Virus record (IMG/VR): IMGVR_UViG_3300031857_000005
Span: 240,366 to 304,365 of that record
Reading direction: 5' to 3' (one strand)
DNA length: 64,000 nucleotides
Positions 16,101-63,409 of this stretch are shown here, in pieces (the first letter of the stretch is position 1; the number at the start of each line of letters is the position of its first letter). The notes below the pieces were generated by a model, which worked only from the letters and a program-made list of their open reading frames with translations, searched no databases and was not told the origin of the DNA. The translations under genes were made by a program, and so were the position numbers.

Positions 16101-16179
16101 TAGTACTTGTATCCCATTAAGCGTAGTTCAAAGTTTTGAACTTAATGTTGGAATAAATTTTAATTTACTATGTAACTAA
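13174..16179 (+). CDS. Baseplate wedge / tail protein, P2 gpI / T4 gp7-like
   Basis: IPSQLLKNLAQTLGW and LFKSKGTRKSIEMLLRLIG match the tail protein I-type motif; Cys-containing C-terminus. Confidence 0.7.
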   Translation: MAIIKYTCPPQASGEGSFSDNLVGFQLVDGGGFTQANFEFTTNVTEKVNRNFSIGSFSDPISLESMNITDIEQSKLLVNKNFQVYPNYDLSEITNFTIYGSLAKRFSVSITKIINYFPAALEIFSSTTRFVTGQTVTTSSYDVIENETYFEIPLYLIRNPFDIDFSINATRNLQLREITVSPLRNLTVEYSKYTVIIDGVNYPINTVVPTTDTDTTLKLYIEGNPFNGQSEIFKTIIIRPTDFYVNKVFNEEFDQVENFLLNREISPKYSAYFNKPIENDDGTYTITQEVVIFPLSGIWNLSISGNDFNSYLLKLSSVAENLDEYRTNLISRFLTTGAIKEFDTSDQKVEKILQIYGRSFDETKKFIGALAYMNSVHYTVKNDIPSQLLKNLAQTLGWKDNISPITNEQLLDSVFSSGENTFTGLSKGQTPEEINYQYYRNLILNSAYLFKSKGTRKSIEMLLRLIGAPDAITEFNEYVYVADQRINLTQFGEQYTQISGGTYVQDIPVLDTTDIYSIMGVQYTGFTTNTVTQDITVTKVDYPIDSFGYPSMPVDSDNFFFQIGGGWIESTPQHRMPAQVDLTTSVFTGANPNYQTTLQPFNYGEEYLQRFKQFPYMDLGFKLRKTADNKKSWVVNNEIIRRSTDGGFTAYYPTDDDRLVLNVKNIDIFMNPAQGLVYDVWNMSRQYNYPIPEEGLNYIAPTYCNPNPNTPYPQRGGIDWTEIIPKPKQKTFFEFAQSFWHNTINVRNRQFITDGKTGGYPTLQSIYWKYLESLELAGIKNDNFTYQTMIDYVNGIGDYWIRLIEQMVPATTIWNAGTKYENSIFHRQKYVWRRQMGCQLVLVPCNPCTLVGQLFTYDCPIQTVSCSVYPWDTNPYINSFGNVLGDMLNGYLSSNGLTFGDCDMNTLQTTWYVNVKFNGNDIINYPFFNGVGYNNPLSVPSGQTWVDAIQTSFVDLQTYGLSYYLNDDETSFTVFNSTCIPLSVVQSFELNVGINFNLLCN

Positions 16180-18440
16180 TGAGTTGTGGTTTACCATATG
16201 TGTATAATTATTTTGTAAGCGGAGATTGCTCTAATATAGGTGCTGGAGTAGTATCATTTGATATTACAGGAAGTACCGCTCCTCCATATTCTGTAATGGA
16301 ATTAACCACATCAGGTTTGTTACCGACTTCTGCGTCTACTACTTCATATTATTTTAGTGGTTTAACTGGTGGTTCATATAGTTTGGAAATTACGGATTCT
16401 TGTTTAAGTCCAGGACCTTCATCCGCAATAATAAATTTTAATATATCTACAGGTAGTTGTTTATCAATATCGTCAACAACAAATACAACTTGTGGTAATA
16501 ATAACGGATCTTTAACCTCAACATTCTCAGTTGATTATGGGGGTGGAGAAGTTTTTCTATATGAAACAACAAATGGGTATCAATCAAGTGGTGCAACAAC
16601 CCTTGGTAGTTATACTTTTAATTCATTATCAGGTGGTACATATTATGTTATCGGAAATGATGGAGGTGGATGTACTGGGAAAAGTGAAAGTTGTATTGTA
16701 AAATCCTCAACAACGGTTGATTTTGGTGTTTATGTTATAAATGATGGTAGTTGTGTTGCACTTGATGGAAGTGGGAAGATAATTGTTACAGGACAGACGG
16801 GAACATCACCATATACATATAGTTGGAGTAGTAATGCGAATGGACAAACAGGTTCTACAGTTACAGGATTAACGAGCGGTGTTTATAGTGTGACTATGAC
16901 GGATTCGTTAGGATGTTCAAAAACACTAACAAATATTACGGTGAACCAAGTGTTACCTGTTGGTATTGTTAATTTTACTATTGTGTCACCAAGTTGTTTC
17001 TCAAATGACGGGGAGGTTACAGTCCAACTTACAGGAGGGACATCACCTTTCTATTATTCAGGATCAAATGGTAGTGTCGCAATTTCATTCTCAGATAGTT
17101 ATACATTTACGGGGTTATCTTCAGGTGATTTTACTGTTAATGTTACCGATGCTGGATTATGTACTAGCTCACAAACAACAACATTATTAACACCTAACGG
17201 ATTCTCAATTCTTAATCTTAGTACGGTTAATTCAAATTGTAATAATAGTGACGGACAAATTTTTATTGAATTAAATGGTGGTTCTAATGTTGGTACATAT
17301 GTTTACACTTTAATAAATTCTTTAGGTAATACTGTATCTACATCAACTGAAGGTAATAATTATCATTCGCCACCATTATCATCGGATACATATACTATTT
17401 TGATTAGTGGAGGTTCTTGTGTATTTACCGCAACAACAATAATAAATAATACTAATTTATATACAATTACCGCAAATACCACAGGTACAACTTGTGGTTT
17501 TAATAATGGGACAATACAGATTTTAGCGTCAAGTGGGGGTACACTACCATATACCTATCAAATCACCGGATTTCCACCTGGACCCGTATCAACATTTAGT
17601 AATTTATCTCCAGGATTTTATGATGTAACTGTAACGGATTCAGGAGGTTGTCAACAAATTGAAACGGTATATATTACAGGATCGTCTCCAGTGTATTTTG
17701 ATTTTTTTGCTACACAACCTATAAGTGGGAATGATGGAGAACTTGATGTATTAATAACAAGTGGGGAGCCACCGTTTATTTTAAATTGGAGTTCTAATGT
17801 TAATGGACAAACAGGAACTACCGTGACTGGTTTAACTGCGGGAACATATTCATTAGAGGTAATTGATGATAATGGATGTGCATTAATTAAAACGATTGAA
17901 TTATTTGGAACAGTACTATATAGTAGTTATCAAACATATAGAGTATGTTCTAATAATTTCCAAAATAGTGGTACTCTTGGTAGAAGAGGTATACAACAAA
18001 TGTTAAATGAAGGTTTCTTTGATTTAACATCGGGAGATACTAATTGTATATTAAATTCTGCTATTTTTACGCTTGATGTGACAGTAAATGGTGTTAATTC
18101 TCAAACCGTATTTTATACATCAACAGGACTTGATGATTACCCAACAGATGAGGAATGGGTTAATGAAATTAAAACTTCTTTATATGGTTTTTCGGGAATT
18201 ACTTCGGTTGAAACCAATATTGAAACTAATAAAATAATAATTAAGAGTGGTTGTTTAACTGGAGGCACAACTTGTCAACCTACGGTAACAACACAATTGG
18301 ATGACACAAGAGTAATAATTAATTTGTTAATAGATTATGACATATCTTGTGTGGAATGTGGAGTATATCAAAAAGTTTTCCAAGACGACTTTGAGTTTGT
18401 ATTCCAAGATGATAATAGTTATATATTCCAAGGACAGTAA
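16179..18440 (+). CDS. SprB-repeat, Cys-rich virion adhesin/fibre protein
   Basis: Repeated TCGxNxG...GGTxPYxY...GLxxGxYxVTVTDxxGC units (SprB repeat); C-terminal FQDD..F.FQD...Y.FQ motif. Confidence 0.75.
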   Translation: MSCGLPYVYNYFVSGDCSNIGAGVVSFDITGSTAPPYSVMELTTSGLLPTSASTTSYYFSGLTGGSYSLEITDSCLSPGPSSAIINFNISTGSCLSISSTTNTTCGNNNGSLTSTFSVDYGGGEVFLYETTNGYQSSGATTLGSYTFNSLSGGTYYVIGNDGGGCTGKSESCIVKSSTTVDFGVYVINDGSCVALDGSGKIIVTGQTGTSPYTYSWSSNANGQTGSTVTGLTSGVYSVTMTDSLGCSKTLTNITVNQVLPVGIVNFTIVSPSCFSNDGEVTVQLTGGTSPFYYSGSNGSVAISFSDSYTFTGLSSGDFTVNVTDAGLCTSSQTTTLLTPNGFSILNLSTVNSNCNNSDGQIFIELNGGSNVGTYVYTLINSLGNTVSTSTEGNNYHSPPLSSDTYTILISGGSCVFTATTIINNTNLYTITANTTGTTCGFNNGTIQILASSGGTLPYTYQITGFPPGPVSTFSNLSPGFYDVTVTDSGGCQQIETVYITGSSPVYFDFFATQPISGNDGELDVLITSGEPPFILNWSSNVNGQTGTTVTGLTAGTYSLEVIDDNGCALIKTIELFGTVLYSSYQTYRVCSNNFQNSGTLGRRGIQQMLNEGFFDLTSGDTNCILNSAIFTLDVTVNGVNSQTVFYTSTGLDDYPTDEEWVNEIKTSLYGFSGITSVETNIETNKIIIKSGCLTGGTTCQPTVTTQLDDTRVIINLLIDYDISCVECGVYQKVFQDDFEFVFQDDNSYIFQGQ

Positions 18441-38015: not shown

Positions 38016-38705
38016 ATGAGAGATAAGAAAATTTTGGTTAGGGATTTAGTTATTCATTTAAAAAAATTAAAGTTTGCAAAATATTTAGTTGAGTATATTG
38101 ATAACGAAATTCCTTTAACCATATTCCCTATTGCGAATAGGGAGGGGTTGACAATTAATGAATGGGTGAAAGATGTTGAAGATGATGTAAGACAACACAC
38201 AGTTTTGACTACAACCAGATTATCATATGATGGTGTTAAATCATTTTTAGTTTACAAATTAAATACAATTCTCTCAACCTATAACGACGCAAATATTAAA
38301 GTACTTAAAATTACTGAGATTGTTAATACTGAAGAAATTGAGGGTAAATCTTTTGACGCTATATTTGAGTTTAACGGTGAAATTATTATAATTGAAATTA
38401 AAGTAACCCAAAGCGATACCGCATTTACAGGTGCAACACATACAACATCAAAAGCGGATATTTTTTTATTAATATCATTATCAATTAATCGTGATAAAAA
38501 AGTTAAGGAAAGTGAAAAATATGTTGATGGTATTTTCGGTATGTTAATTAACTTGGATAAAGATTTTTGGAAAGGTGAGGCTAAAAATAATAGTAGTTTT
38601 ACTACACTTAAATTTTTATCAAATATTGACTATAGTGAAAATATTTTTTGTGGTAGTCTTAAAAACAATAAAGTATACCAAAAACTAATTTTTGAAAAAA
38701 TATGA
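38016..38705 (+). CDS. Putative PD-(D/E)XK restriction-type endonuclease
   Basis: SFDAIFEFNGEIIIIEIKVT (D...ExK); ATGA-coupled to a DNA MTase. Confidence 0.55.
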   Translation: MRDKKILVRDLVIHLKKLKFAKYLVEYIDNEIPLTIFPIANREGLTINEWVKDVEDDVRQHTVLTTTRLSYDGVKSFLVYKLNTILSTYNDANIKVLKITEIVNTEEIEGKSFDAIFEFNGEIIIIEIKVTQSDTAFTGATHTTSKADIFLLISLSINRDKKVKESEKYVDGIFGMLINLDKDFWKGEAKNNSSFTTLKFLSNIDYSENIFCGSLKNNKVYQKLIFEKI

Positions 38706-39613
38706 ATGAAGTAATTTTAGGTAATGCGATTGAAGTATTACAAAGATATGAGGATAATACATTTGATTTAACTGTAACATCACCACCGTATGATAACTTA
38801 AGAACTTATAATGGAAAAATTAAGGATGAGGTTGTCTTTGAAGATGGATTTAGTTTCCCATTTGTGGAAATGGCTCGTGAGTTATATAGAGTAACCAAGA
38901 AGGGTGGTGTTGTTATTTGGGTGGTAAATGATCAAGTAAAAAATGGTGGAGAAACTGGTAGTTCATTCAGACAAGCACTTAAATTTAAGGAGATTGGATT
39001 TACATTGTACGATACGATGATTTATCATAAGAATGGAGCCCCATTTCCTGAAACAGGTAGATACTCACAAGTATTTGAATATATGTTCGTCCTTTCAAAA
39101 GGGAAACCAAAAACGGTTAATCTATTAAAAGATAAACCAAATAGATGGGCGGGACATAGTAATTTTGGTGATCCATCAAAAAGAGAAAAAGACGGAAACC
39201 TTAAAAAGGTTGACAAGTTTGTTGTATCTGAATTCGGTACAAGGTATAATGTATGGTATGTTAATAATGGTAAAGGGTTCTCATCCAAAGACGACATTGC
39301 ATTCCAACATCCTGCAATATTTCCGGAATCATTGGCTGAGGATCATATTCTATCTTGGAGTAATGAAGGTGATATAGTATTAGATCCTATGTGTGGTAGT
39401 GGAACGACATTGAAGATGGCGAAACTTAATAACAGGAATTATTTGGGTATTGACATCAATGAAGAATATGTCGATTTATCAAATCTAAGAATACAAAATA
39501 TTGAACCATACACTAATGAAACACCTAATCCAAAGGTTAAATTCCTTTTATCTAAAGAAGATGCTTTATTGAAAAGAAAAAATAATAAAGAATCTAAAAA
39601 TTTGTTGGATTAA
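38702..39613 (+). CDS. DNA methyltransferase, N4/N6 family beta class (SPPY, probably N4-cytosine)
   Basis: TSPPY, then HPAIFP and VLDPMCGSGTT. Confidence 0.92.
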   Translation: MNEVILGNAIEVLQRYEDNTFDLTVTSPPYDNLRTYNGKIKDEVVFEDGFSFPFVEMARELYRVTKKGGVVIWVVNDQVKNGGETGSSFRQALKFKEIGFTLYDTMIYHKNGAPFPETGRYSQVFEYMFVLSKGKPKTVNLLKDKPNRWAGHSNFGDPSKREKDGNLKKVDKFVVSEFGTRYNVWYVNNGKGFSSKDDIAFQHPAIFPESLAEDHILSWSNEGDIVLDPMCGSGTTLKMAKLNNRNYLGIDINEEYVDLSNLRIQNIEPYTNETPNPKVKFLLSKEDALLKRKNNKESKNLLD

Positions 39614-40186: not shown

Positions 40187-40987
40187 ATGAAGGAAAAAGG
40201 AACAGGAATGCCCATTAATCAGGATGAAATCTCTCACTACCTAAAGGATATTAGGAAGATTAAAGTTATGACACCTGAAAGGGAAAAAGAATTATCTAAA
40301 CTTATGATGTCGGATACTTTAACTGACAAACAACGAAAACAAGTTGAACAGGAGTTGTTAACAGGTAATTTACGATTTGTTATTACCGTTGCAAAACAAT
40401 ATCAAAATCAAGGTTTGGATTTTCCTGATTTGGTTGCTGAGGGTAACTTAGGGTTATTGAAAGCAATTAAAAACTTTGATTGGAGTAAAAATTTGAGATT
40501 TATTTCATATGCCGTTTGGTGGGTTAAACAATCTATTATTCAGTCTTTAAATGACAATGCGAGAACAATTAGACTTCCTGTAAATGTTGTTCAGGAACTT
40601 CATAAAGCTAAAAAAGAAATTGAGAATAATGGAGGAAAACTATCGGATAAATTCTCATCTTTACCATCAATGATTGACTTAGATATGAATATCAATGATG
40701 AGGGAGATACATTCCTTGATATGATACCAAATATGGATGCAGACGCTCCTGATGCGGCTTTTAATACTGCGGACATTCTTAAAGAAAAATTAATCAATAC
40801 ACTTAGTGTTTTAGATGAAAGAGAACGAGTAATTATTGAGGATTATTTTGGACTTAGTGGAACACCAAGAACTTTGGAAGATATTGGAGGTGATTTTGGT
40901 TTAACTAAAGAACGAGTAAGACAGATTAAAGAAAGAGCTTTGAGAAGGTTACGAAATGAGAGTTCTGAATTATTTGATTATATCTAA
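40187..40987 (+). CDS. RNA polymerase sigma70 factor, Bacteroidota primary-sigma-like (no region 1.1)
   Basis: NLRFVITVAKQYQNQGL, EGNLGL, FISYAVWW, RTIRLP, TLEDIG...TKERVRQIKE. Confidence 0.93.
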   Translation: MKEKGTGMPINQDEISHYLKDIRKIKVMTPEREKELSKLMMSDTLTDKQRKQVEQELLTGNLRFVITVAKQYQNQGLDFPDLVAEGNLGLLKAIKNFDWSKNLRFISYAVWWVKQSIIQSLNDNARTIRLPVNVVQELHKAKKEIENNGGKLSDKFSSLPSMIDLDMNINDEGDTFLDMIPNMDADAPDAAFNTADILKEKLINTLSVLDERERVIIEDYFGLSGTPRTLEDIGGDFGLTKERVRQIKERALRRLRNESSELFDYI

Positions 40988-51808: not shown

Positions 51809-52648
51809 ATGTTAAGTTATATCGGAGGTAAGAGTAAAATTGGAAAGTGGATAGTCCCTTTCTATGATAATAATATGGAAACATATGTTGAAACATTCGG
51901 AGGGATGTTTTGGTGTTTCTTCAACATGGACTTAAAACAGTTCCCAAACCTAAAGAAAGTTGTTTATAACGACTTTAATCCACTTAATTACAATCTGTTT
52001 AAATGTATTCAGAACCCAACTGAATTATTGAATGCAATTAACGCAATTGATTGTCAGAAATTTGGTGTAGAAGTAACTCCACCAATTTATAAAGAACAGT
52101 TTATCAGGTTTCAGGCTGAAATTTTTAGTGAAGGTTTCAGTGTAGAACCTGGTAATTATGAAGTTGCTGCTAAATACGCTTATGTCCTTACACAGGTTTT
52201 TAGTGGTTCTAAACCTGAGACAAGTTCATTCATTGACTTGAAAGGTAAATACAAATCAAAGTATCTTACATTTAGAGATAAATTATCTAAACCTGATTGG
52301 GTAGAACATTTCTTGAAAATTACGGATGTTGAAAATATGGATTTTGAGGATGTCATTAAAAAGTATGATTCACCAACAACATATTTTTATGTTGATCCAC
52401 CATATTGGAAAACTGAAAATTACTATTCAAATCACGATTTTGACAGAGAAGATCATGAAAGACTTGCAAATATATTAAAAGGAATGGAAGGTAAATTTAG
52501 TTTGTCGTATTATGACTTCCCGTTGTTATCGGAATGGTTCCCTAAAGAACAATATAGTTGGGAGAAAAAAGAATTCGCTAAGGCGGCGGCAGCCAAAAAA
52601 GGTACCAAACAAAATATGGGTGAAGAATTACTTATACTGAATTATTAA
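51809..52648 (+). CDS. DNA adenine methyltransferase, D12/Dam family
   Basis: YIGGKS, YVETFGG, YNDFN, YVDPPY, LSYYD, EELLILNY. Confidence 0.92.
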   Translation: MLSYIGGKSKIGKWIVPFYDNNMETYVETFGGMFWCFFNMDLKQFPNLKKVVYNDFNPLNYNLFKCIQNPTELLNAINAIDCQKFGVEVTPPIYKEQFIRFQAEIFSEGFSVEPGNYEVAAKYAYVLTQVFSGSKPETSSFIDLKGKYKSKYLTFRDKLSKPDWVEHFLKITDVENMDFEDVIKKYDSPTTYFYVDPPYWKTENYYSNHDFDREDHERLANILKGMEGKFSLSYYDFPLLSEWFPKEQYSWEKKEFAKAAAAKKGTKQNMGEELLILNY

Positions 52649-52697: not shown

Positions 52698-54542
52698 ATG
52701 AAATTAGTAAAAATTTTATCATCGGTAATCGTAGAAAATGTTGATCCTAAATTTAGATTAACAGAAATATCAAATAAATTAATGAATCAACTTGTCCTTA
52801 AATTTAGTAACGAAACTAAAGATTCTGAGGATGATATTAAAAGTTATATTGGTGATTTTGATAAATATAAAAACGGATTACCTGCCGACAAACGAGACAT
52901 TACAAAATATACATATGATCAACTTAAGTCTGTGATTTTATCAAAAAGAGTTAAGAAGGAAGAAGGTGATATATTTAAAACCTATATGAAGGGTCCTGGT
53001 AAAGGTTCTGATCAAAGACAAGTTAAGTCTATGATTAAGAAATTCTTAGAGATAAGAAATTATCTACCTGAACCTAATAGGGATATTATGAGATACCCTT
53101 ATTTGAAGTTGGTTGAATTGATACAAAATAAATTTGGTGGAATTATTACCAAGGCGGCATTTGAAAAATATAAGAAAGAAAGAAACGATTTAACAAACGA
53201 GCAAATACTTTCTTACATTGAAAGATATGTTGATTTGTATGATAGATTGGAAGCAAATACGCCACCGATTATGTTAATGTCATTTGATGAGTTGGAGGCG
53301 GCATTGGATCATTTACCTGACGGAGATGATACACCAAAGAAAAAAGGTGACGACTTTAAAGATATTGAAACAATCTACGATAAAGATAATTTGTATATCT
53401 TCAAACCAAACGGTAAAGAACAATGTATTAGATTAGCACATGGAAGACCTTGGTGTACATCAAGAATTGGTGGTGGTAACTTATATTACAACTATCGTTT
53501 GGAAAATAACTTAACACTTTACTATGTTATTGACAGAGATACCCCATTTGATGATTTGAACTTCGCGGTTGTTATCTTGGTTGATGAGTATGGAAGAAAA
53601 AGAATTGCCGATGGTAAAAACATGGCTGGTGGATATTCAGGACACAGAACAGAGACTTGGGATACAATCTCATCTAAAGTTCCGAAGTTAAAAGACAAAG
53701 AATACTTATTTACTCCAGATCCACTTACTGATAGAGAAAAAGGATTATTAAGAAAATACAAACATATTAATGTTCAAGACGATGCAGTTAAAGAACTTGG
53801 TTCGGTTGAAGATGCTGAGTTTTGGTTAGAAATTGCAAGTCCAAACCTAACAAACAAACCAAGAGTTTATATTAATTTACCTTCAGAACTTAAAAAGAAA
53901 TATATTTCTTTGGGTATGGATTTAACAGGTGATATGATTACAAGTTCAGAACCTGATGTTGTTAAATATTATTTGGCAAGAAAGATTGATTCGTTGAGAA
54001 CCAAAACTTTAAATAATCTTACCACCGCGGATATTGCTTTGATTAATATGCCGGGAATGAAAAATCTTAAGGAAGAACTTAAGGTTAAATATGCCGGACA
54101 GTTGGCAACAGAAGGTGACAACATTGTTAAGATTACATACCCGAATGATGCGTCATCAAAATATATTGCATTGTTTGGTTTTGATGAATTATTTGAAAAT
54201 TTACCTGAAAGTATTACATATTTAACAATATCAAATAAATCAAACGATTCTCTTGATTTGGATATACCGGCAAGCATTGGTAAGTTTACAAATATAATAG
54301 CATTGGTACTTGAGAATTGTGTAAAATCACTACCTGAAGAATTAGGAAGAATGGAAGGATTAACATTCCTAACATTACAGAATAATAAAAATCTTCAAAG
54401 TCTACCTGAGTCTTTAGCGGATTTAGAGTATTTGGATCTTATTGCGTTATCGGGATCAAATCCAAGTGTTGTAATACCTGAAAGATTAAAGAATATGATG
54501 GTTGAAGAAGGTGATGGTTTTTACTATATTTCAAGAGACTAA
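52698..54542 (+). CDS. Late protein with a PcfJ-like (WC) domain and C-terminal leucine-rich repeats
   Basis: Late motif at 52677; ILSSVIVE leader; GRPWCTS...LYYVID; IPASIGKFTNI, LPEELGRMEGL and LPESLADLEYL LRRs. Confidence 0.7.
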   Translation: MKLVKILSSVIVENVDPKFRLTEISNKLMNQLVLKFSNETKDSEDDIKSYIGDFDKYKNGLPADKRDITKYTYDQLKSVILSKRVKKEEGDIFKTYMKGPGKGSDQRQVKSMIKKFLEIRNYLPEPNRDIMRYPYLKLVELIQNKFGGIITKAAFEKYKKERNDLTNEQILSYIERYVDLYDRLEANTPPIMLMSFDELEAALDHLPDGDDTPKKKGDDFKDIETIYDKDNLYIFKPNGKEQCIRLAHGRPWCTSRIGGGNLYYNYRLENNLTLYYVIDRDTPFDDLNFAVVILVDEYGRKRIADGKNMAGGYSGHRTETWDTISSKVPKLKDKEYLFTPDPLTDREKGLLRKYKHINVQDDAVKELGSVEDAEFWLEIASPNLTNKPRVYINLPSELKKKYISLGMDLTGDMITSSEPDVVKYYLARKIDSLRTKTLNNLTTADIALINMPGMKNLKEELKVKYAGQLATEGDNIVKITYPNDASSKYIALFGFDELFENLPESITYLTISNKSNDSLDLDIPASIGKFTNIIALVLENCVKSLPEELGRMEGLTFLTLQNNKNLQSLPESLADLEYLDLIALSGSNPSVVIPERLKNMMVEEGDGFYYISRD

Positions 54543-56055: not shown

Positions 56056-56370
56056 ATGGAAATTACAGGAAATCAATTACAAGAAAAAATAAATAATGGT
56101 GAGAAAGTAATCGTTGAATTATGGGCAACTTGGTGTGGACCCTGCAAAATGATGAAACCAATTTTTGAAAGAGTTGCAACTGAAAATACTACTAATGTAC
56201 AGATGTATACGATGGATGTTGATCAAAACAGAGAAGTTGCAATGGCATTAGGGGTTAGGAGCGTACCGACAATTAAAGTATTTAATGGTGGGAATGTAAC
56301 TAACACAAGAGTTGGGGTTCTCCAAGAAAATGAAATAAAAGGTTTAGTTCAAGAATTAATCAATGGATAA
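56056..56370 (+). CDS. trxA: Thioredoxin
   Basis: WATWCGPCK; VRSVPT. Confidence 0.93.
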   Translation: MEITGNQLQEKINNGEKVIVELWATWCGPCKMMKPIFERVATENTTNVQMYTMDVDQNREVAMALGVRSVPTIKVFNGGNVTNTRVGVLQENEIKGLVQELING

Positions 56371-56647
56371 GGTAGTAGTATTATTCACAATGGAAGGATG
56401 TCCTTTTTGTGTTGAGATGAAAGATATGTTAGTTAAAGAAGGGATTGATTTTGTTGATCGCGACATTGACGAATATGAAGAGGAATATAATATGTTTGTT
56501 GAGATAACAGAGAATGAATTTGTTCCGGCATTTATGTTAATTGAAAATCCTGAGACAGAACCGATTAGTCAATTATTTGCACCTGATAGAGATTATCAAG
56601 ATTTAGAAGACGGTGTCAAGATAATTAGAGAATGGATTGAGAAATAA
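56363..56647 (+). CDS. Glutaredoxin/NrdH-like redoxin
   Basis: GCPFC; FVPAF. Confidence 0.8.
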   Translation: MDKVVVLFTMEGCPFCVEMKDMLVKEGIDFVDRDIDEYEEEYNMFVEITENEFVPAFMLIENPETEPISQLFAPDRDYQDLEDGVKIIREWIEK

Positions 56648-56652
56648 AAAAT

Positions 56653-56681
56653 AAACCCCACCTTTTAGGATGGGGTTTTTT
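56653..56681. terminator. Bidirectional terminator between convergent genes
   Basis: AAACCCCA...TGGGGTTT with flanking A and T runs. Confidence 0.8.
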
Positions 56682-56682
56682 G

Positions 56683-57381
56683 TTAGAATAGAATTATATG
56701 TTCTAATAAATCTTGTTTAAGGTACGGTTTTTCACCATCAGGATTCAGGACATCATCAATTAAATTATAATCCGACAAACGCTCTCTAAATGAGTCCATA
56801 TTAAAATCAAATACATCAAGAATAAGTGACTTAATTGATTTCTTGTCAATTTTTGAGTCGGATATAATTTTAATTTTTAAATCTTCATTATTATCTTCCT
56901 CAGTGGTGAAATAAAATGATACTTCATTGACACCTAATAAATTAAACATATGGTTCATTATGTAATGTGAGTAATATGTGTTTAACCTTCCACAATCTAA
57001 ACTATAACCATATGGGAATTCTGATGAAATTGATATTTCTGAAATATCAGGTTCAGGTTCCTCAACAAAAATATCTTTCTTTACCATAACCCAACCCTTA
57101 TGAATTGTGTTTATATCCTGATTATATCTAACAACATCAATGGTATTAATATCTGACATTTCCAGCTCCTTCAGGGTATCACCAAAAGATTCCTTGAACT
57201 CATTTTTAATTTCGTTTATGTCTAAATACTCATTTGATGTTGTTAAACCATTAACAACCATAAATGCACCACAATCTGTGACTTGGATAATTGATTTTTC
57301 TGTTTTGTTGATTTTTGAGAGAATAAAGTCGGCAAATAAATTTACGATTCCTCTTTTTGAATTTTTGTTAATTAATCTCAT
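56683..57381 (-). CDS. Degenerate S-adenosylmethionine synthetase (MetK)-like protein: N- and C-domains only, catalytic motifs lost
   Basis: By-eye alignment to the MetK N-domain, the DRSAAY helix and the C-terminal FD..PW.K.D motif (see findings). Confidence 0.6.
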   Translation of the reverse strand: MRLINKNSKRGIVNLFADFILSKINKTEKSIIQVTDCGAFMVVNGLTTSNEYLDINEIKNEFKESFGDTLKELEMSDINTIDVVRYNQDINTIHKGWVMVKKDIFVEEPEPDISEISISSEFPYGYSLDCGRLNTYYSHYIMNHMFNLLGVNEVSFYFTTEEDNNEDLKIKIISDSKIDKKSIKSLILDVFDFNMDSFRERLSDYNLIDDVLNPDGEKPYLKQDLLEHIILF

Positions 57382-57433
57382 AACTATTAAATTTTTATAA
57401 TGTGTATGAAATTAAAACAACATTATAAATAGT

Positions 57434-58450
57434 TTAGTAATAAAGACGATCAGGTAACCCGTCATTGATATTCTCAACAACTTTTCTATTATCTGGATAG
57501 TCAGGAACCCTGATTCTTAAAAAATCATCACTATCGCCCATGTAATGGCGTAACATTGATGAGTAATCACCATATTCAAATAAAGTATCCTCATATCCAG
57601 CAAATGAATTTAAAAAATTCTCAATATCACTTTTAATGTTTTTAATTTTAATATAAGGTATATATACGGTTTTTAAACCGTTTTTGTTTTCAACCCAACT
57701 GTGCTTACCCTCAAAGTAAGTTGATAACTCATCAAATACCTCCGAGTACACTTCATCATTATATGCCTGATTGTAAGCCTCATCACCCAACCAACGAAAA
57801 CTATTCATCAAATCATTTAAATCACCTTTAAATAATGAATTCATAGAGTCCTCATCCTCAACAACAGACATCACATTTGATTCAGTAATGATAAATCTAC
57901 CATCGTCATCCGACATATCTCTAAACAATTCACTTTTATAATCATCTAAAGATAATTCTTGATTACCAACCAATTCTAAAACTCTCTCGGCTAATAATTT
58001 CATATTCTTTTCGTTAAGTTCTTCAACAATATCTTTATAAACATCGTAAACGGTATCACTATAAGGTTCCCACCAATCCTCATCTAAAACATTTTTTACA
58101 ATATCTCTATCGTTATATTCTCTTGAATACTGGTTGTCCTTAAAAAAATCGGATAACTCAGATAAGTCACTCAACATTAAATAATAACCATCACCACGAA
58201 TTTCAACATCACTTAAAAAACCCTGAACAATCTCGTTTAGATATGAAGGATCGTTTTGTAGGCGATATAACATCAACTCATTTACAAACCGTTCATCTTC
58301 GTAGTGTATACTATCTAAATCAAAATAATTTAAAAATCCTGCGCGTTTTACATAGGAATAAAATCTTTTTACATCACCTCCGAATACATCAGAGATATCA
58401 TCCCATTCACCATTATTGAATTTATTTACTAAATCTAAAACTTTTGACAT
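57434..58450 (-). CDS. Highly acidic late protein
   Basis: 338 aa, D/E-rich; TATTTATA lies 3 nt before the ATG (58454-58461, minus strand). Confidence 0.7.
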   Translation of the reverse strand: MSKVLDLVNKFNNGEWDDISDVFGGDVKRFYSYVKRAGFLNYFDLDSIHYEDERFVNELMLYRLQNDPSYLNEIVQGFLSDVEIRGDGYYLMLSDLSELSDFFKDNQYSREYNDRDIVKNVLDEDWWEPYSDTVYDVYKDIVEELNEKNMKLLAERVLELVGNQELSLDDYKSELFRDMSDDDGRFIITESNVMSVVEDEDSMNSLFKGDLNDLMNSFRWLGDEAYNQAYNDEVYSEVFDELSTYFEGKHSWVENKNGLKTVYIPYIKIKNIKSDIENFLNSFAGYEDTLFEYGDYSSMLRHYMGDSDDFLRIRVPDYPDNRKVVENINDGLPDRLYY

Positions 58451-58516: not shown

Positions 58517-58663
58517 TTACCTCTTGTTATAATACTTCTCAACGATTTTTTTAACTGACTCTTGAACAGTGGCATTTTTTACTTGCTGTGGCTGTCCTTG
58601 AGCCGGTGCTTGTTGAGTAGCGGGAGTTCCACCATTGTTCTTATTTTTGCATCCACACCCCAT
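58517..58663 (-). CDS. Small 48-aa MGCGC peptide (not in ORF track)
   Basis: MGCGCKNKNNGGTPATQQAPAQGQPQQVKNATVQESVKKIVEKYYNKR; has its own late motif (58694-58701) and terminator. Confidence 0.7.
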   Translation of the reverse strand: MGCGCKNKNNGGTPATQQAPAQGQPQQVKNATVQESVKKIVEKYYNKR

Positions 58664-58757: not shown

Positions 58758-60266
58758 ATGAAAAAAGTAATTAGACTTACCGAATCAGATTTAATTAAAA
58801 TAATTAAAACTAAACTCAACGAAGAAGAATCTGAATTTATTGAAATTCCCGCAAATGAATATGAACAGTTATTATCTGTAACTGGATATAATGGTGCGGC
58901 TCTTGAAAAGACAAGAAGGTTTAGAGGTAAGAAAATAAAAGTAAACGGTAGGTTAGATATATCAGGTAAACCAGTTACAAATCTTGGAACAATATATCTA
59001 CAAGGATCATTAGAGGCAACTAGATCAAAGTTAGAAACTTTAAATGGTGTGACAATTACGGGGTCTAAATGGTACTATAATACACCATTGGAGTCTAAAG
59101 AAAAGATAAGGAAACGAAGAAAAGAATTGGATGATGCCCAAGAAAGAAGAGAAAATGGTGTGTGGGACTTAGATTATCCGAACATTGATGATGAGGGATT
59201 AAAAGCAAATGCTGCGTTTCAGTACCTTGTTGAAAATGGTGAGATAGAAGAAATAACATCAGAAGAAAAAAGAGAATTAAAAAATTTAGAACAAAGACAA
59301 CTTAATATTTCTGATAGAATGGAAGCGGAAAATGATGAGGAACTTTTATCTGAATTGCAAAGTGAATACGATGAATTACAAGAAGACATTGATGATTTAT
59401 TAAGAAAGGAAAATAATGATGTTTATGGATTGATACCCAAAAGTTTTGGACATTATAATATGTTATCTTTTATGACAACATATGATGATTTTAATGATGT
59501 GACAATTGCCGTTGGAACCGAATATGAAGCGGATGAATCAAAAAAAGAATGGGTTGAACAATTATTGGATGATGGAGGATATAGACACTTTAATCAATAT
59601 ACGGTTGAAAGACATATTGATGGTGATGAGGTTGCCGACTATTTTGAAGATGTTATTAGAGAATGGATATATGATGATCCTGATAATTATGACGTTGTAA
59701 AAGATTTAAGTAGAAGTCAAAAAGATGAACTTTGGGTTCTTAAAATGGAGAAATGGGTTTATGAAAATGAAGGAGTCAGGTTTCCAATAAAGTACCCAAC
59801 AAAAGAAGAAAATGGAACTGTATTTGATTTTTGGGATGAAGATGAAGAACACGAATTTCAATTAAAATATGAAGGAAATAAGTGGGTATTATATAAAGAC
59901 GGATCGATAGTTCAACCAGGTCAACTATATGATGATGAAGACACTGACGATCACCAAGATGATCGTGAAAGTAGAATTTCTGATATTGAATATGAAATAC
60001 AAGAAATTGAAGAAAATCCTGATGGTGATTTGGATGAAGATTCGGTTGAAGAAAGGGTTGAAGATAAAAAATACGAAATTTCTAATGACCCTATAAGTTG
60101 GTTGAGAAATTACGACATGGATGTTGATAATTTTATTGATGAAAAGGCATTTATTGAAGATGTTGCTGGTGATGAGGATTATGGTATTTTGAATGGTTAC
60201 GACTCAACATATGATATTATTAATTTGGGTAACCAAAGTTATGTTGTAATGATAACCGATAAATAA
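58758..60266 (+). CDS. Highly acidic late protein with an MKKVIRLTESDL leader
   Basis: N-terminal MKKVIRLTESDLIKIIK...LNE; very D/E-rich body. Confidence 0.7.
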   Translation: MKKVIRLTESDLIKIIKTKLNEEESEFIEIPANEYEQLLSVTGYNGAALEKTRRFRGKKIKVNGRLDISGKPVTNLGTIYLQGSLEATRSKLETLNGVTITGSKWYYNTPLESKEKIRKRRKELDDAQERRENGVWDLDYPNIDDEGLKANAAFQYLVENGEIEEITSEEKRELKNLEQRQLNISDRMEAENDEELLSELQSEYDELQEDIDDLLRKENNDVYGLIPKSFGHYNMLSFMTTYDDFNDVTIAVGTEYEADESKKEWVEQLLDDGGYRHFNQYTVERHIDGDEVADYFEDVIREWIYDDPDNYDVVKDLSRSQKDELWVLKMEKWVYENEGVRFPIKYPTKEENGTVFDFWDEDEEHEFQLKYEGNKWVLYKDGSIVQPGQLYDDEDTDDHQDDRESRISDIEYEIQEIEENPDGDLDEDSVEERVEDKKYEISNDPISWLRNYDMDVDNFIDEKAFIEDVAGDEDYGILNGYDSTYDIINLGNQSYVVMITDK

Positions 60267-61236: not shown

Positions 61237-61384
61237 TATTATTAATAATCTTGATAACCTATCAAGATATCTATCAGCCGATGCAATTATTATTAGTGAC
61301 GACTTTTCAAATGAAGTGTTCAAAATGTTCTGCGAAGGAAAAACTGAGGATGAAATCATAAAATATATAAATAAAAACAAATGA
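61202..61384 (+). CDS. Hypothetical protein
   Basis: ATG 61202 (MGFNKR); ATGA-coupled to glutamine synthetase. Confidence 0.6.
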   Translation: MGFNKRILRKDNIINNLDNLSRYLSADAIIISDDFSNEVFKMFCEGKTEDEIIKYINKNK

Positions 61385-62580
61385 AGATTAAACTTGAATA
61401 TCTGTGGTTAGACGGATATATGCCGGAACCAAATTTAAGAAGTAAGGTAAAAATTGTTAATTACGATGACATAAAAAATTCATTTATAACGGGTAGATTT
61501 CCTGAATGGAACTTTGACGGATCATCAACAAACCAAGCAGAAACTGGGACTTCAGACTGTATTTTAAAACCTGTAAGACATTATTTGGATGATAAATTTG
61601 GTAGTGTGTATGTTCTTTGTGAGGTTATGAATTCAGACGGAACACCACATCAATCAAATACCAGATCATTACTTGGTAATGAACAAGAGGATTTGTGGTT
61701 TGGTTTTGAACAAGAATACTTTATCTATGATAGAAAAAATAAATGTATTTTAGGCCACGATGAAAACAACTTGGAACCACAAGGTAAATATTATTGTGGT
61801 GTTGGAGAATATGTTGCGGGTAGAGAATTTGTTGAAGAACATATGAATTTATGTTTAAGGTATGGGATTAACATAACAGGAATAAATGCCGAGGTTGCAC
61901 TTGGACAATGGGAGTATCAAGTATTCTCTCAAGGTAAATTGAAATCAGGAGATGATTTATGGATGTCTAGATACCTATTACATAAGTTGTCCGAAAAATA
62001 TAATTATGGGATTGAACTACACCCAAAACCAATCCAAAAAGGTGAATGGAATGGATCTGGACTTCACACAAACTTCTCAAATTATAAAATGAGGGAAGAA
62101 GGTGGTGAAAATCATTTTAAATCAATTTTCTCAAGTTTTGCCACAAGACACCAAGAACATATTGAAAATTATGGTTCATCAAATGAATTAAGATTGACGG
62201 GTAAATTTGAAACCCAATCAATTAATAAGTTTAGTTGGGGTATTTCAGATAGAGGTGCATCAATTAGAGTTCCACAATCAACCGCAAAAGAATGGAAGGG
62301 ATATGTTGAAGATAGACGACCATCATCTAATGCTGATCCATATAAAATCATTTATCAAATATGTGAATCATTAAGAAACGCTGAAGAGATTGACGACATC
62401 AAACATAAAATGAATTATAAACTTGATATGGACAACCTTAAGATGGATTATAAAACAATCCCAACCGATGAACTATTAAAAGAATACTTCAATGATGAAG
62501 AATTTGAATTGGATGGTAAAACAATGGATGGAAGTAATATCCCTACAAAAGAAATTAAATTTGATTTAAATGGAAAATAA
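61381..62580 (+). CDS. Glutamine synthetase, type II
   Basis: EYLWLDG, LRSK, WNFDGSST, FGFEQEY, GINAEV..GQWEYQ, HPKP..WNGSGLHTNFS, RLTG.FET, DRGASIRVP, YVEDRRP.SNADPY. Confidence 0.95.
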   Translation: MKIKLEYLWLDGYMPEPNLRSKVKIVNYDDIKNSFITGRFPEWNFDGSSTNQAETGTSDCILKPVRHYLDDKFGSVYVLCEVMNSDGTPHQSNTRSLLGNEQEDLWFGFEQEYFIYDRKNKCILGHDENNLEPQGKYYCGVGEYVAGREFVEEHMNLCLRYGINITGINAEVALGQWEYQVFSQGKLKSGDDLWMSRYLLHKLSEKYNYGIELHPKPIQKGEWNGSGLHTNFSNYKMREEGGENHFKSIFSSFATRHQEHIENYGSSNELRLTGKFETQSINKFSWGISDRGASIRVPQSTAKEWKGYVEDRRPSSNADPYKIIYQICESLRNAEEIDDIKHKMNYKLDMDNLKMDYKTIPTDELLKEYFNDEEFELDGKTMDGSNIPTKEIKFDLNGK

Positions 62581-63409
62581 TATATTTAACAAATTACCCG
62601 GAATGATGTTTGGTAAGGGTGAGGGTAACATTAGTTGGTACCCAGAAAGGATTCATACCCTACAAGATTTGGTATACCAAATTAAACCAAGAAATATTAT
62701 TGAAATAGGATTCAATGAAGGACATTCAATGGTTTTAATATGTGAGACATTATTGAAAATAATTAATGAAGATCCTGATTTTAATAGGAAACCAATAATT
62801 GTTTTTGTATTTGATGACTGTAAATATGAGAGTACTGTTAACAATCACTCAATACTTGCCAAGCATTACAGGAAGTGGAACATACATTTGAGTTTATTTC
62901 CTGGTAACTCCCTTGAGGTTGTTCCAAGAGTTTTAGACACATCAAAAACAAAATTTGATTTTATTGAGATTGATGGGTGCCACTTTGAGGAATGCGTTAG
63001 AGGTGATATTAATAATGTGATTAATTTTATTAATGATGATGGTATTGTATATTTGGATGATTATAAGTCCTCAAAAGATCCTACTGAAGGTGTTAATAAT
63101 GTAATTGAATCATTTGACTGGCAAGGATTTAATACCTATCATATTGATGGAGTATTTTGGGCTCACAAAAAGAAAAAAGAAATGGAAGAAAAAAAGGAAC
63201 AAGTAAATCACCCTAACCACTATGGGGGAGAGTCAAACCCATATGAAGCAATCAAGGTGATTGATGCTTGGGACTTAGGATTCTCCCTTGGTAATACTGT
63301 GAAGTATATCTCAAGAGCGGGTAAGAAAGAGTTAGATAAAGAATTACAGGATCTTAAAAAAGCATTGTGGTATTTGCAACACCACATTGAAACATTGGAG
63401 AAAAAATGA
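62570..63409 (+). CDS. Class I SAM-dependent methyltransferase (Methyltransf_24-like) fused to a DUF3310-like domain
   Basis: IIEIGFNEGHS, FDFIEIDGCH, GIVYLDDY; C-terminal VNHPNHY...GNTVKYISRAGKK...DLKKALWYL. Confidence 0.75.
   Translation: MENNIFNKLPGMMFGKGEGNISWYPERIHTLQDLVYQIKPRNIIEIGFNEGHSMVLICETLLKIINEDPDFNRKPIIVFVFDDCKYESTVNNHSILAKHYRKWNIHLSLFPGNSLEVVPRVLDTSKTKFDFIEIDGCHFEECVRGDINNVINFINDDGIVYLDDYKSSKDPTEGVNNVIESFDWQGFNTYHIDGVFWAHKKKKEMEEKKEQVNHPNHYGGESNPYEAIKVIDAWDLGFSLGNTVKYISRAGKKELDKELQDLKKALWYLQHHIETLEKK

What the first reader, a model, noticed from the sequence alone, without database searches (positions are those of the whole stretch)
56683..57381. Catalytically dead, centre-deleted MetK (SAM synthetase) mimic
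Seen: three segments line up by eye with MetK in the correct order. GIVNLFADFILSKI...FMVVNGLTTSNEYLDINEIKNEF aligns with the N-domain (DKIADQISDAVLDAI...MVLVGGEITTSAWVDIEEI). GRLNTYYSHYIMNHM aligns with DRSAAYAARYVAKNI. LDVFDF...KPYLKQD aligns with the C-terminal FDL...PWEKTD. The GHPDK, GAGDQG and GGGAFSGKD catalytic motifs are absent, and the protein is 232 aa versus about 380-420 aa, so the central domain appears deleted. Known: MetK active sites form at subunit interfaces; phage T3 SAMase binds and inhibits host MetK; type I R-M and BREX need SAM. Inference: a pseudo-enzyme that co-assembles with host MetK to poison or retune SAM supply would be a new anti-defence or metabolic-control mechanism. 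A late-type TATTTATA motif lies upstream (57424-57431). The phage also encodes four SAM-using MTases in this window, so timed regulation is as plausible as simple depletion.
Basis: partly seen in the sequence, partly recalled or inferred. Interest (0 to 1): 0.8.

Follow-up and report, generated by a model that had tools for sequence, protein, structure and literature searches.

The report
Two-lobed, motif-less MetK-fold phage protein
This phage gene encodes a very distant, shortened relative of the enzyme that makes S-adenosylmethionine; it keeps two of the enzyme's three lobes, has lost all its catalytic motifs, belongs to a large unannotated phage family, and its actual job (including the proposed poisoning of the host enzyme) remains untested.

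Summary
The ORF at 56683-57381 (-) is real (232 aa). On its own it matches nothing in Pfam, PHROGs, NCBIfam or the PDB. It belongs to a large unannotated phage family of 200-277 aa proteins. An AlphaFold2 model from a 107-sequence alignment (pLDDT 96.5) gives only MetK/MAT structures as its top 50 Foldseek PDB hits (E ~1e-7, TM 0.60-0.67). The alignments skip about 125-145 MetK residues. The N-terminal half is supported by fold only. The GHPDK, GAGDQG and GGGAFSGKD motifs occur in 0 of 270 family members. The structural part of the finding is therefore confirmed: a two-lobed MetK derivative that cannot make SAM. The mechanism (poisoning host MetK, anti-restriction) is untested, and three results weaken it. 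Identity to MetK is about 10% and no MetK signature motif is retained. The gene is a syntenic core gene of one lineage of large freshwater phages. It carries a conserved upstream element shared with tail and baseplate genes, which suggests late expression. My best guess is a repurposed MetK-fold protein with a remodelled conserved site. It is a new variant of a known fold, function open.

The parts
56683..57381 (-). CDS of the 232-aa MetK-fold protein (stop codon 56683-56685)
   Evidence: ORF list. Family of 799 clusters at 90% identity and 254 representatives at 50% identity. AF2 model pLDDT 96.5. Foldseek top 50 hits all MetK. dN/dS about 0.12.
57079..57381 (-). Lobe 1 (residues 1-101), order alpha-beta-beta-alpha-beta-beta. 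Corresponds to MetK ~8-106 (Pfam S-AdoMet_synt_N, the structural 'central domain').
   Evidence: Secondary structure of the model. Consistent but individually insignificant phmmer/hhalign placements on MetK 15-106. Foldseek alignments span the MetK N-terminus.
56998..57078 (-). Inter-lobe linker (residues 102-128). It contains the family signature loop S-x-F-P-x-G-Y-S (residues 120-127, 57001-57024).
   Evidence: S120, P123 and G125 are conserved in at least 93% of a 24%-identity alignment. The signature is found in 211 of 229 long members and 0 of 79 MetKs. hhalign places it on the MetK GAGDQGLMFGYA segment, with G125-Y126 on MetK G125-Y126 (low confidence).
56686..56997 (-). Lobe 2 (residues 129-232). 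Homologous to MetK ~270-375, the C-terminal lobe from the DRSAAY helix onward.
   Evidence: hhalign. Pfam PF02773 positions 41-114 of 138. TIGR01034 positions 268-342. R132, Y136, Y140 and F191-D192-F193 match MetK R, Y, Y and F-D-L.
57424..57433 (-). Conserved upstream element ACTATTTATA, 42 nt before the ATG; a likely phage promoter element.
   Evidence: Exact in 26 of 53 distinct relatives' upstream regions, at 37-42 nt in 25 of them; 43 of 53 with at most 1 mismatch; none in reverse orientation; shuffles average 2.8. The same 8-mer precedes tail and baseplate genes.
57392..57402 (-). Second conserved upstream block, CATTATAAAAA, between the first element and the start codon.
   Evidence: Seen by eye as conserved in upstream regions of diverged relatives (listing). 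Sequence read.
56653..56678 (.). G+C-rich hairpin with T-runs on both sides. Terminator shared by this gene and the convergent Grx gene.
   Evidence: 10-pair stem, 5 GC pairs. Sequence read.
57434..58450 (-). Co-oriented upstream gene, 338 aa, very acidic (pI 4.2), no recognisable relatives. It is found directly upstream in all 80 close relatives, and an ORF of ~274-283 aa holds that position in the distant members whose upstream region was recovered (L162/L163, L165, L168).
58517..58663 (-). First gene of the three-gene minus-strand unit, 48 aa, basic, starts MGCGC. It has its own TATTTATA element.
   Evidence: (present in 76 of 80 loci).

Best explanation
The gene encodes a very old, strongly diverged derivative of S-adenosylmethionine synthetase (MetK). 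One of MetK's three alpha+beta lobes has been excised, together with the triphosphate loop (MetK ~131-269). This leaves a compact two-lobe protein.

Shown: the MetK fold, the missing segment, the loss of all three catalytic motifs, purifying selection, lineage-wide synteny and a conserved upstream element.

Inferred:
- It cannot make SAM.
- It is not simply a mimic of MetK. It looks like a repurposed MetK-fold protein whose most conserved residues are polar or loop-forming (N14, D36, T47, D82, Y86, the S-x-F-P-x-G-Y-S loop, R132, Y136/Y137, D189, D192). In my tentative mapping, from the low-confidence alignments, several lie near positions of MetK substrate-binding residues.
- I therefore think it most likely binds a specific ligand or partner at a remodelled site on the sheet face. 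It probably acts as a homodimer like MetK, and probably late in infection, together with the two co-oriented genes.

Confidence is about 0.9 that it is a two-lobed, non-SAM-synthesising MetK homologue. It is about 0.35 for the 'repurposed binding site, not a host-MetK poison' mechanism. The figure given is for the whole statement.
For: Fold: AF2 model pLDDT 96.5, pTM 0.91, built without templates from a family-only alignment. Foldseek PDB top 50 hits are all MetK/MAT, E 9e-8 to 7e-6, TMq 0.59-0.67 for all but one chain (rank 26, 0.34), with 148 hits at E<=1e-3. Alignment lengths of 350-384 columns for all but that one hit imply at least about 120-150 skipped MetK residues.

Homology of lobe 2: PF02773 is the only Pfam family hit by more than 2 members (10 of 107, best E 4.3e-5). 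TIGR01034 gives E 8.3e-5. hhalign gives E 0.0044 against a reversed control.

Loss of catalysis: 0 of 270 members carry GHPDK, GAGDQG or GGGAFSGKD.

Own conserved site: conservation table and family signature.

Selection and core status: dN/dS 0.12. The same arrangement appears in 80 close loci and 4 distant members.

Timing: the TATTTATA element is upstream of this gene, its two partners and tail/baseplate genes. 12 of 22 copies lie within 60 nt upstream of same-strand starts, against 3.4% expected. It is conserved in relatives. A phage sigma factor is encoded in the window.
Against: No ligand, partner or oligomeric state was tested. Coordinates of the model were not available to me, so the statement that conserved residues sit near former MetK active-site positions rests on low-confidence sequence alignments and strand periodicity.

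Sequence evidence for lobe 1 is not above chance.

'Late' expression is inferred only from a shared motif. The one metatranscriptome contig on the gene cannot be told from DNA carry-over.

Strong conservation of a polar surface would equally fit a surface that binds the highly conserved host MetK.
Confidence: 0.4

Rival explanations
1. Subunit poison. The two-lobe protein pairs with a host MetK monomer through the flat sheet face that normally forms the MetK dimer. Both MetK active sites need two intact subunits, so the heterodimer is inactive and SAM supply falls. This would weaken SAM-dependent defences or retune methylation.
For: MetK fold retained. [quoted passage not shown] There is precedent that a phage profits from inhibiting MetK: T3 SAMase binds MetK and lowers SAM synthesis (bioRxiv 10.1101/2023.02.27.530186). 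The family has a strongly conserved polar surface. That could be explained by the high conservation of MetK among bacteria, which is my own knowledge.
Against: Identity to MetK is only 8-12%. None of MetK's conserved signature motifs is kept; I take these to line the dimer interface, from my own knowledge, and a mimic of a self-complementary interface should keep some. The promoter element is shared with structural genes, suggesting late expression, too late to protect incoming DNA unless the protein is packaged. It is a lineage-wide syntenic core gene, unlike typical counter-defence genes. No interaction was tested.
Confidence: 0.15
2. Structural or assembly role. The protein is a late, non-enzymatic building block or chaperone (virion-associated, ejected or scaffolding). 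It would work with the co-oriented acidic 338-aa protein and the 48-aa protein, and the MetK fold would serve only as a stable two-lobe scaffold.
For: Each of the three genes has the element also found before tail and baseplate genes. The trio is kept in 76 to 80 of 80 loci, and an ORF of ~274-283 aa sits directly upstream in three distant members. The protein is acidic (pI 4.6) and its neighbours are very acidic. It is a core gene.
Against: Many of the most conserved positions are polar (N14, D82, Y86, S120, D189), which is more typical of a binding or catalytic site than of a scaffold. The unit lies outside the tail/baseplate block, among replication and metabolism genes. There are no virion proteomics for this uncultured lineage.
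Confidence: 0.2
3. Fold convergence or modelling artefact: the protein is not related to MetK at all, and the resemblance is a generic beta-alpha-beta-beta-alpha-beta arrangement.
For: Profile-profile probabilities are low (hhalign 0.5-7.9%). Lobe 1 has no significant sequence signal. All Pfam and TIGR hits are below the curated cut-offs. The structure is predicted, not solved.
Against: The top 50 Foldseek hits are exclusively MetK, with both lobes in MetK order and orientation. Two independent HMM libraries give the same register for lobe 2, and PF02773 recurs in 10 members. Shared R...Y...Y and F-D-(L/F) residues are present. No templates and no MetK sequences were in the alignment.
Confidence: 0.07

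Closest known systems
S-adenosylmethionine synthetase MetK/MAT (Pfam PF00438 + PF02772 + PF02773; TIGR01034)
   Same: Same lobe fold and lobe order. Lobe 2 is detectably homologous (DRSAAY-type helix, F-D-L motif). The sheet-face architecture that in MetK forms the large dimer interface is presumably kept.
   Different: 232 aa instead of about 384. MetK ~131-269 is missing (the whole middle Pfam domain and the triphosphate loop). GHPDK, GAGDQG and GGGAFSGKD are all absent. Identity is 8-12%. It has its own invariant S-x-F-P-x-G-Y-S loop. It is found only on phage contigs.
Full-length phage-encoded MetK (e.g. Streptococcus prophages, Erysipelothrix phage phi1605, Microcystis phage Mel-JY01)
   Same: Phage-borne members of the MetK superfamily (138 INPHARED records).
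   Different: Those are intact proteins, 41-63% identical to E. coli MetK (E down to 1e-161) in the listed phage records and mostly covering over 95% of it, and presumably active. Mel-JY01's gene lies in a replication module and is not syntenic with this locus. The present family is not retrieved by them at sequence level.
T3 SAMase / SAM lyase (gene 0.3)
   Same: This is the only documented phage protein that binds and inhibits MetK and thereby defeats type I R-M and BREX.
   Different: Unrelated fold (nine-stranded beta barrel). It binds the outside of the MetK N-terminal domain rather than replacing a subunit. It is an enzyme that cleaves SAM, and it is an immediate-early gene (my own knowledge). 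The present protein shows no similarity to it, and only the MetK chain of 8bb1 was matched.
MAT-beta (MAT2B), the non-catalytic regulatory subunit of human MAT-alpha2
   Same: A non-catalytic protein that regulates a MAT by binding it. Complexes appear among the MetK hits (9qpo, 9qpp).
   Different: From my own knowledge, not tested here: MAT-beta has an unrelated Rossmann-type fold, is eukaryotic, and inserts a tail at the MAT dimer interface rather than mimicking a subunit.

Membership tests
MetK / methionine adenosyltransferase (enzyme family) | Three-lobe architecture: Pfam S-AdoMet_synt_N + _M + _C, about 380-400 aa | tested here: not met
   232 aa. All 254 family representatives listed or counted are 277 aa or shorter. 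There is no PF02772 hit in any of 107 members, and PF02773 hits start at profile position 40-44. Foldseek alignments skip at least about 120-150 MetK residues.
MetK / methionine adenosyltransferase (enzyme family) | Signature motifs GHPDK, GAGDQG and GGGAFSGKD (metal, methionine and triphosphate binding) | tested here: not met
   0 of 270 family sequences carry them, against 74-78 of 79 MetKs.
MetK / methionine adenosyltransferase (enzyme family) | Scores above the curated thresholds of Pfam and NCBIfam models | tested here: not met
   The window protein has no hit at E<=10 or E<=1. The best member, P0133, scores 23.9 bits against the 25-bit cut-off for PF02773 and 21.7 against 309.4 for TIGR01034.
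MetK / methionine adenosyltransferase (enzyme family) | SAM synthetase activity; obligate dimer through the large flat interface | not testable with these tools
   No multimer prediction or assay was available. The interface definition comes from PMC9202080.
MetK-like fold (structural superfamily) | Lobes of beta-alpha-beta-beta-alpha-beta topology arranged as in MetK | tested here: met
   Model pLDDT 96.5. Top 50 Foldseek PDB hits are all MetK/MAT, probability 1.00, TMq 0.59-0.67 for all but one chain.
Phage SAM lyase / SAMase counter-defence proteins | Homology or fold similarity to T3 or Svi3-3 SAM lyase | tested here: not met
   No Pfam, PHROG or PDB sequence hit. No SAM-lyase chain appears among the 50 Foldseek hits listed, and only the MetK chain of 8bb1 is matched.
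Phage SAM lyase / SAMase counter-defence proteins | Binds host MetK or lowers SAM | not testable with these tools
   Requires pull-down, an activity assay or multimer modelling.
Phage counter-defence genes in general | Early expression and patchy, accessory distribution | tested here: inconclusive
   The upstream element is shared with tail and baseplate genes, and the gene is syntenic core across the lineage. Both argue against membership, but timing is only inferred.

The most novel reading that the evidence does not exclude
A phage-encoded pseudo-subunit derived from MetK heterodimerises with host MetK across the large interface and inactivates both shared active sites. This 'subunit poison' would control SAM supply (counter-defence or timed metabolic control) by a mechanism unlike the T3 SAMase. 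Alternatively, and equally novel, the MetK fold has been repurposed into a two-lobe enzyme or ligand sensor with a new active site.
Probability: 0.15. Interest if true: 0.85.

Novelty: new variant of a known kind. Interest (0 to 1): 0.6.

Why it matters
As far as these searches show, MetK has only ever been seen as a three-lobe enzyme. Neither Pfam nor the PDB holds a two-lobe, motif-less derivative. Here such a derivative forms a large protein family (799 clusters at 90% identity), under purifying selection, that is a core gene of a widespread lineage of large freshwater phages. It is absent from Pfam, PHROGs and NCBIfam.

This gives structural biologists a natural 'minimal MetK' to study. 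It also gives phage biologists a concrete, testable candidate for interference with SAM metabolism, or for a new function built on the MetK fold. If the host-MetK poison idea held, it would be a new class of metabolic takeover by subunit mimicry. If it does not hold, the family is still a clear case of a central metabolic enzyme being cut down and repurposed by viruses.

Tried and rejected
1. Single-sequence searches (Pfam, PHROGs, PDB phmmer, NCBIfam, BLASTP against E. coli MetK) found nothing.
2. Family profiles (A1, A2) against PDB sequences gave only a chance-level PNPase S1 hit (E 0.31). This may explain JGI's 'RPS1 domain' name for some members.
3. The first AF2 run, with a shallow 27-sequence alignment, gave pLDDT 55 and was discarded.
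4. Global hhalign, and a scan of 195 artificial MetK deletion constructs to locate the deletion boundaries, gave no usable scores. The boundaries therefore rest on two abutting local alignments and on the Pfam profile coordinates.
5. The ESM Atlas was uninformative for the protein (its own model has pLDDT 0.40) and for the 338-aa neighbour.
6. INPHARED nucleotide and protein searches found no isolate relative of the gene.
7. The upstream 338-aa partner was searched with a 31-sequence profile against the PDB and each member against Pfam, with nothing consistent.
8. Mel-JY01 MetK as a syntenic ancestor was rejected, because its gene is in a replication module.
9. Public RNA runs gave one 243-nt metatranscriptome contig on the gene, which cannot be told from DNA.
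10. There is no true MetK and no paralogue of the family in the window or in four distant loci.
11. The ~40-aa insertion of the long subfamily was examined as a possible remnant of the lost domain, and no MetK features were seen.

Full report
**Observation**

The window carries an ATG-initiated ORF of 232 aa at 56683-57381 on the minus strand, exactly as reported. It ends at a G+C-rich hairpin (56653-56678) shared with the convergent glutaredoxin gene. By itself the protein matches nothing:
- no Pfam family at E<=10, and only chance-level PHROG hits;
- no PDB sequence and no NCBIfam model;
- no DNA or protein relative among 50,697 sequenced phages;
- BLASTP against E. coli MetK (taken from NC_000913) gives only fragments with E>1.

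**Family**

A word-indexed search found 799 clusters at E<=1e-3. All 120 listed hits have no Pfam domain and are unannotated, apart from a spurious JGI name. They are nearly all 231-232 aa, on contigs up to 311 kb. An exhaustive profile search over 1.84 billion representatives found 254 clusters at 50% identity. Every listed one is 277 aa or shorter, so there is no MetK-length intermediate. A 107-sequence alignment (A2, mean column identity 24%) keeps N14, F40, G45, D82, Y86, S120, P123 and G125 in at least 90% of members. It also keeps a signature loop S-x-F-P-x-G-Y-S, which is present in 211 of 229 long members and in no MetK. dN/dS against an 78%-identical relative is about 0.12.

**Fold**

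With a shallow alignment AlphaFold2 failed (pLDDT 55). With A2 it gave pLDDT 96.5 and pTM 0.91, without templates and without any MetK sequence in the input. Foldseek against the PDB returned 148 hits at E<=1e-3. The 50 listed are all MetK/MAT from bacteria, plants and humans (E 9e-8 to 7e-6, probability 1.00, 7-12% identity; TMq 0.59-0.67 for all but one chain). The alignments are 350-384 columns long for all but one hit. The match therefore runs from near the MetK N-terminus to near its C-terminus and skips at least about 120-150 residues. The viral structure library holds a single relative, an uncharacterised protein of an uncultured phage.

**Homology at sequence level**

Scanning every member of A2 against Pfam gave one recurrent family. 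S-AdoMet_synt_C (PF02773) was hit by 10 of 107 members, best E 4.3e-5, always on profile positions ~41-114. No other family was hit by more than two members. NCBIfam gave the same placement on TIGR01034 metK (E 8.3e-5). The C-half alone scores 23.8 (E 0.0044) against 9.7 for a reversed control.

The N-half aligns where expected (family 8-96 on MetK 15-106) but scores no better than the reversed control. For that lobe the evidence is structural only.

The two local alignments abut at family residue 129 (MetK ~130 and ~270). The family therefore corresponds to MetK minus about residues 131-269. That is the whole S-AdoMet_synt_M domain plus the first ~40 positions of S-AdoMet_synt_C, which carry the triphosphate loop. 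A scan of artificial deletion constructs could not refine this.

GHPDK, GAGDQG and GGGAFSGKD are absent from all 270 family sequences held and present in 74-78 of 79 MetKs. I conclude that the protein is a two-lobed MetK derivative that cannot synthesise SAM.

**Context**

The window is part of a large tailed phage. It encodes the following:
- baseplate J and an SprB-repeat protein;
- DnaJ, DUF932, Trx and Grx, and a glutamine-synthetase-like protein;
- primase-like and SbcC-like proteins and an amidase;
- a sigma-70-family factor.

Its baseplate protein is only 25-28% identical to those of Flavobacterium and Microcystis phages. The locus recurs in many lake and freshwater metagenomes.

The gene is the last of three co-oriented minus-strand genes (48 aa, 338 aa, 232 aa) set among plus-strand genes. 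In 80 viral contigs with 54-100% identical copies, the 338-aa gene is always directly upstream, the 48-aa gene is present in 76, and Grx and Trx converge downstream. Grx and Trx also converge downstream of the distant members (24-36% identity) P0133, P0153, P0263 and P0238. An ORF of ~274-283 aa lies directly upstream in the first three of these. The family is thus a syntenic core gene of one broad phage lineage. The window holds no real MetK and no paralogue. The 338-aa partner has no recognisable relatives.

**Regulation**

TATTTATA is not over-represented in number (22 copies against 16.3 +/- 3.6), but its placement is specific. 12 of 22 copies lie within 60 nt upstream of a same-strand start codon, against 3.4% expected, with the caveat that intergenic DNA is A+T-rich. 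These copies lie before:
- tail and baseplate-region genes (849, 18777, 23121, 24662, 26282);
- each of the three genes of this unit and the divergent gene at 58758.

Upstream of this gene the core ACTATTTA(T)A is exact in 26 of 53 distinct relatives, at 37-42 nt from the ATG in 25 of them (43 of 53 with at most one mismatch). It never occurs in reverse orientation, and shuffles average 2.8. This is a real regulatory element. Because it is shared with structural genes, and the phage encodes its own sigma factor, late expression is the simplest reading, but that is an inference. Public RNA data could not settle it.

**Mechanism**

MAT monomers pair through a large flat interface that holds both active sites, so the dimer is the obligatory unit (PMC9202080). 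T3 SAMase shows that a phage can gain from inhibiting MetK (bioRxiv 10.1101/2023.02.27.530186).
- identity to MetK is about 10%, and none of MetK's signature motifs (which I take, from my own knowledge, to line the dimer interface) is retained;
- expression is probably late;
- the gene is a lineage-wide core gene;
- the family has its own invariant loop and polar residues.

These points fit better a protein that has acquired its own binding site on the old scaffold. My ranking is:
1. repurposed MetK-fold protein with a remodelled ligand or partner site, about 0.35 within an overall 0.9 for the fold assignment;
2. structural or assembly role with its two partners, about 0.2;
3. host-MetK poison, about 0.15;
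4. no real relationship to MetK, about 0.07.

**Comparison and novelty**

The protein fails every membership test for the MetK enzyme family except the fold, and it is unrelated to SAM lyases. Intact phage MetKs exist (138 records), but they are ordinary enzymes in other contexts. A full-text literature search found no description of a truncated or MetK-like phage protein. I rate it a new variant of a known kind: a new two-lobe architecture of the MetK fold that defines a large unannotated phage family.

Noticed in passing
window 40187-40987 (+): Phage-encoded sigma-70-family factor (Sigma70_r2 E 5e-17, r4 E 2e-15, r1_2 E 2e-5). It is a candidate reader of the TATTTATA-type promoters.
   Followed up: partly
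window 811, 18755, 23093, 24601, 24638, 26268, 52677, 58746 (+); 51543, 57424, 58454, 58694 (-): TATTTATA sits 3-53 nt upstream of same-strand start codons in 12 of 22 occurrences. It marks tail and baseplate genes and a small island around 57.4-58.8 kb. It reads as the reverse complement of the T4 late promoter TATAAATA (T4 motif from my own knowledge), but here in the gene direction.
   Followed up: partly
window 38702-39613, 51809-52648, 62570-63409 (+): Three SAM-dependent methyltransferases are recognised by Pfam: N6_N4_Mtase, D12 Dam, and Methyltransf_24 fused to DUF3310.
   Followed up: partly
window 58517-58663 (-): Conserved 48-aa basic ORF starting MGCGC, with a Gln/Pro/Ala-rich middle. 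It is the first gene of the three-gene unit, is present in 76 of 80 related loci, and has no known function.
   Followed up: no
window 57434-58450 (-) and 58758-60266 (+): Two very acidic proteins (338 aa, pI 4.2, net -40; 502 aa, pI 4.3, net -68) flank the divergent promoter region. Both are conserved in all 80 related loci and neither has any recognisable relative.
   Followed up: partly
window 56056-56370 and 56363-56647 (+): Overlapping thioredoxin and glutaredoxin/NrdH-like genes always converge on the MetK-fold gene, even in the most distant family members (L162, L165, L168, L169).
   Followed up: partly
window 61381-62580 (+): Glutamine-synthetase-like gene (Gln-synt_C E 8e-19, Gln-synt_N E 2e-8), an apparent auxiliary metabolic gene. 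It is present in only 40 of 80 related loci.
   Followed up: no
L165 5204-6028 and 6805-7563: In one distant relative, two extra ORFs (274 and 252 aa) flank the family gene. Neither matches the family HMM, so they are not paralogues. The 274-aa ORF was taken as the counterpart of the 338-aa partner, at 14% identity.
   Followed up: partly
family members P0126-P0159 (265-277 aa), e.g. L162 8001-8813: A long subfamily has a ~40-residue insertion between the two lobes, with a conserved N-S-x-R-P-x-Y motif. It shows no MetK middle-domain features. These members give the best MetK C-domain scores.
   Followed up: partly
family members P0051-P0064: JGI names some members 'predicted RNA-binding protein with RPS1 domain'. 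The only trace of this is a chance-level match of the N-lobe to the S1 domain of PNPase (E 0.31), so the name is probably wrong.
   Followed up: yes
window 16179-18440 (+) and 52698-54542 (+): An SprB-repeat protein lies in the tail-fibre region, which hints at a Bacteroidota host. A 614-aa protein has a C-terminal leucine-rich repeat and is preceded by the TATTTATA element.
   Followed up: no
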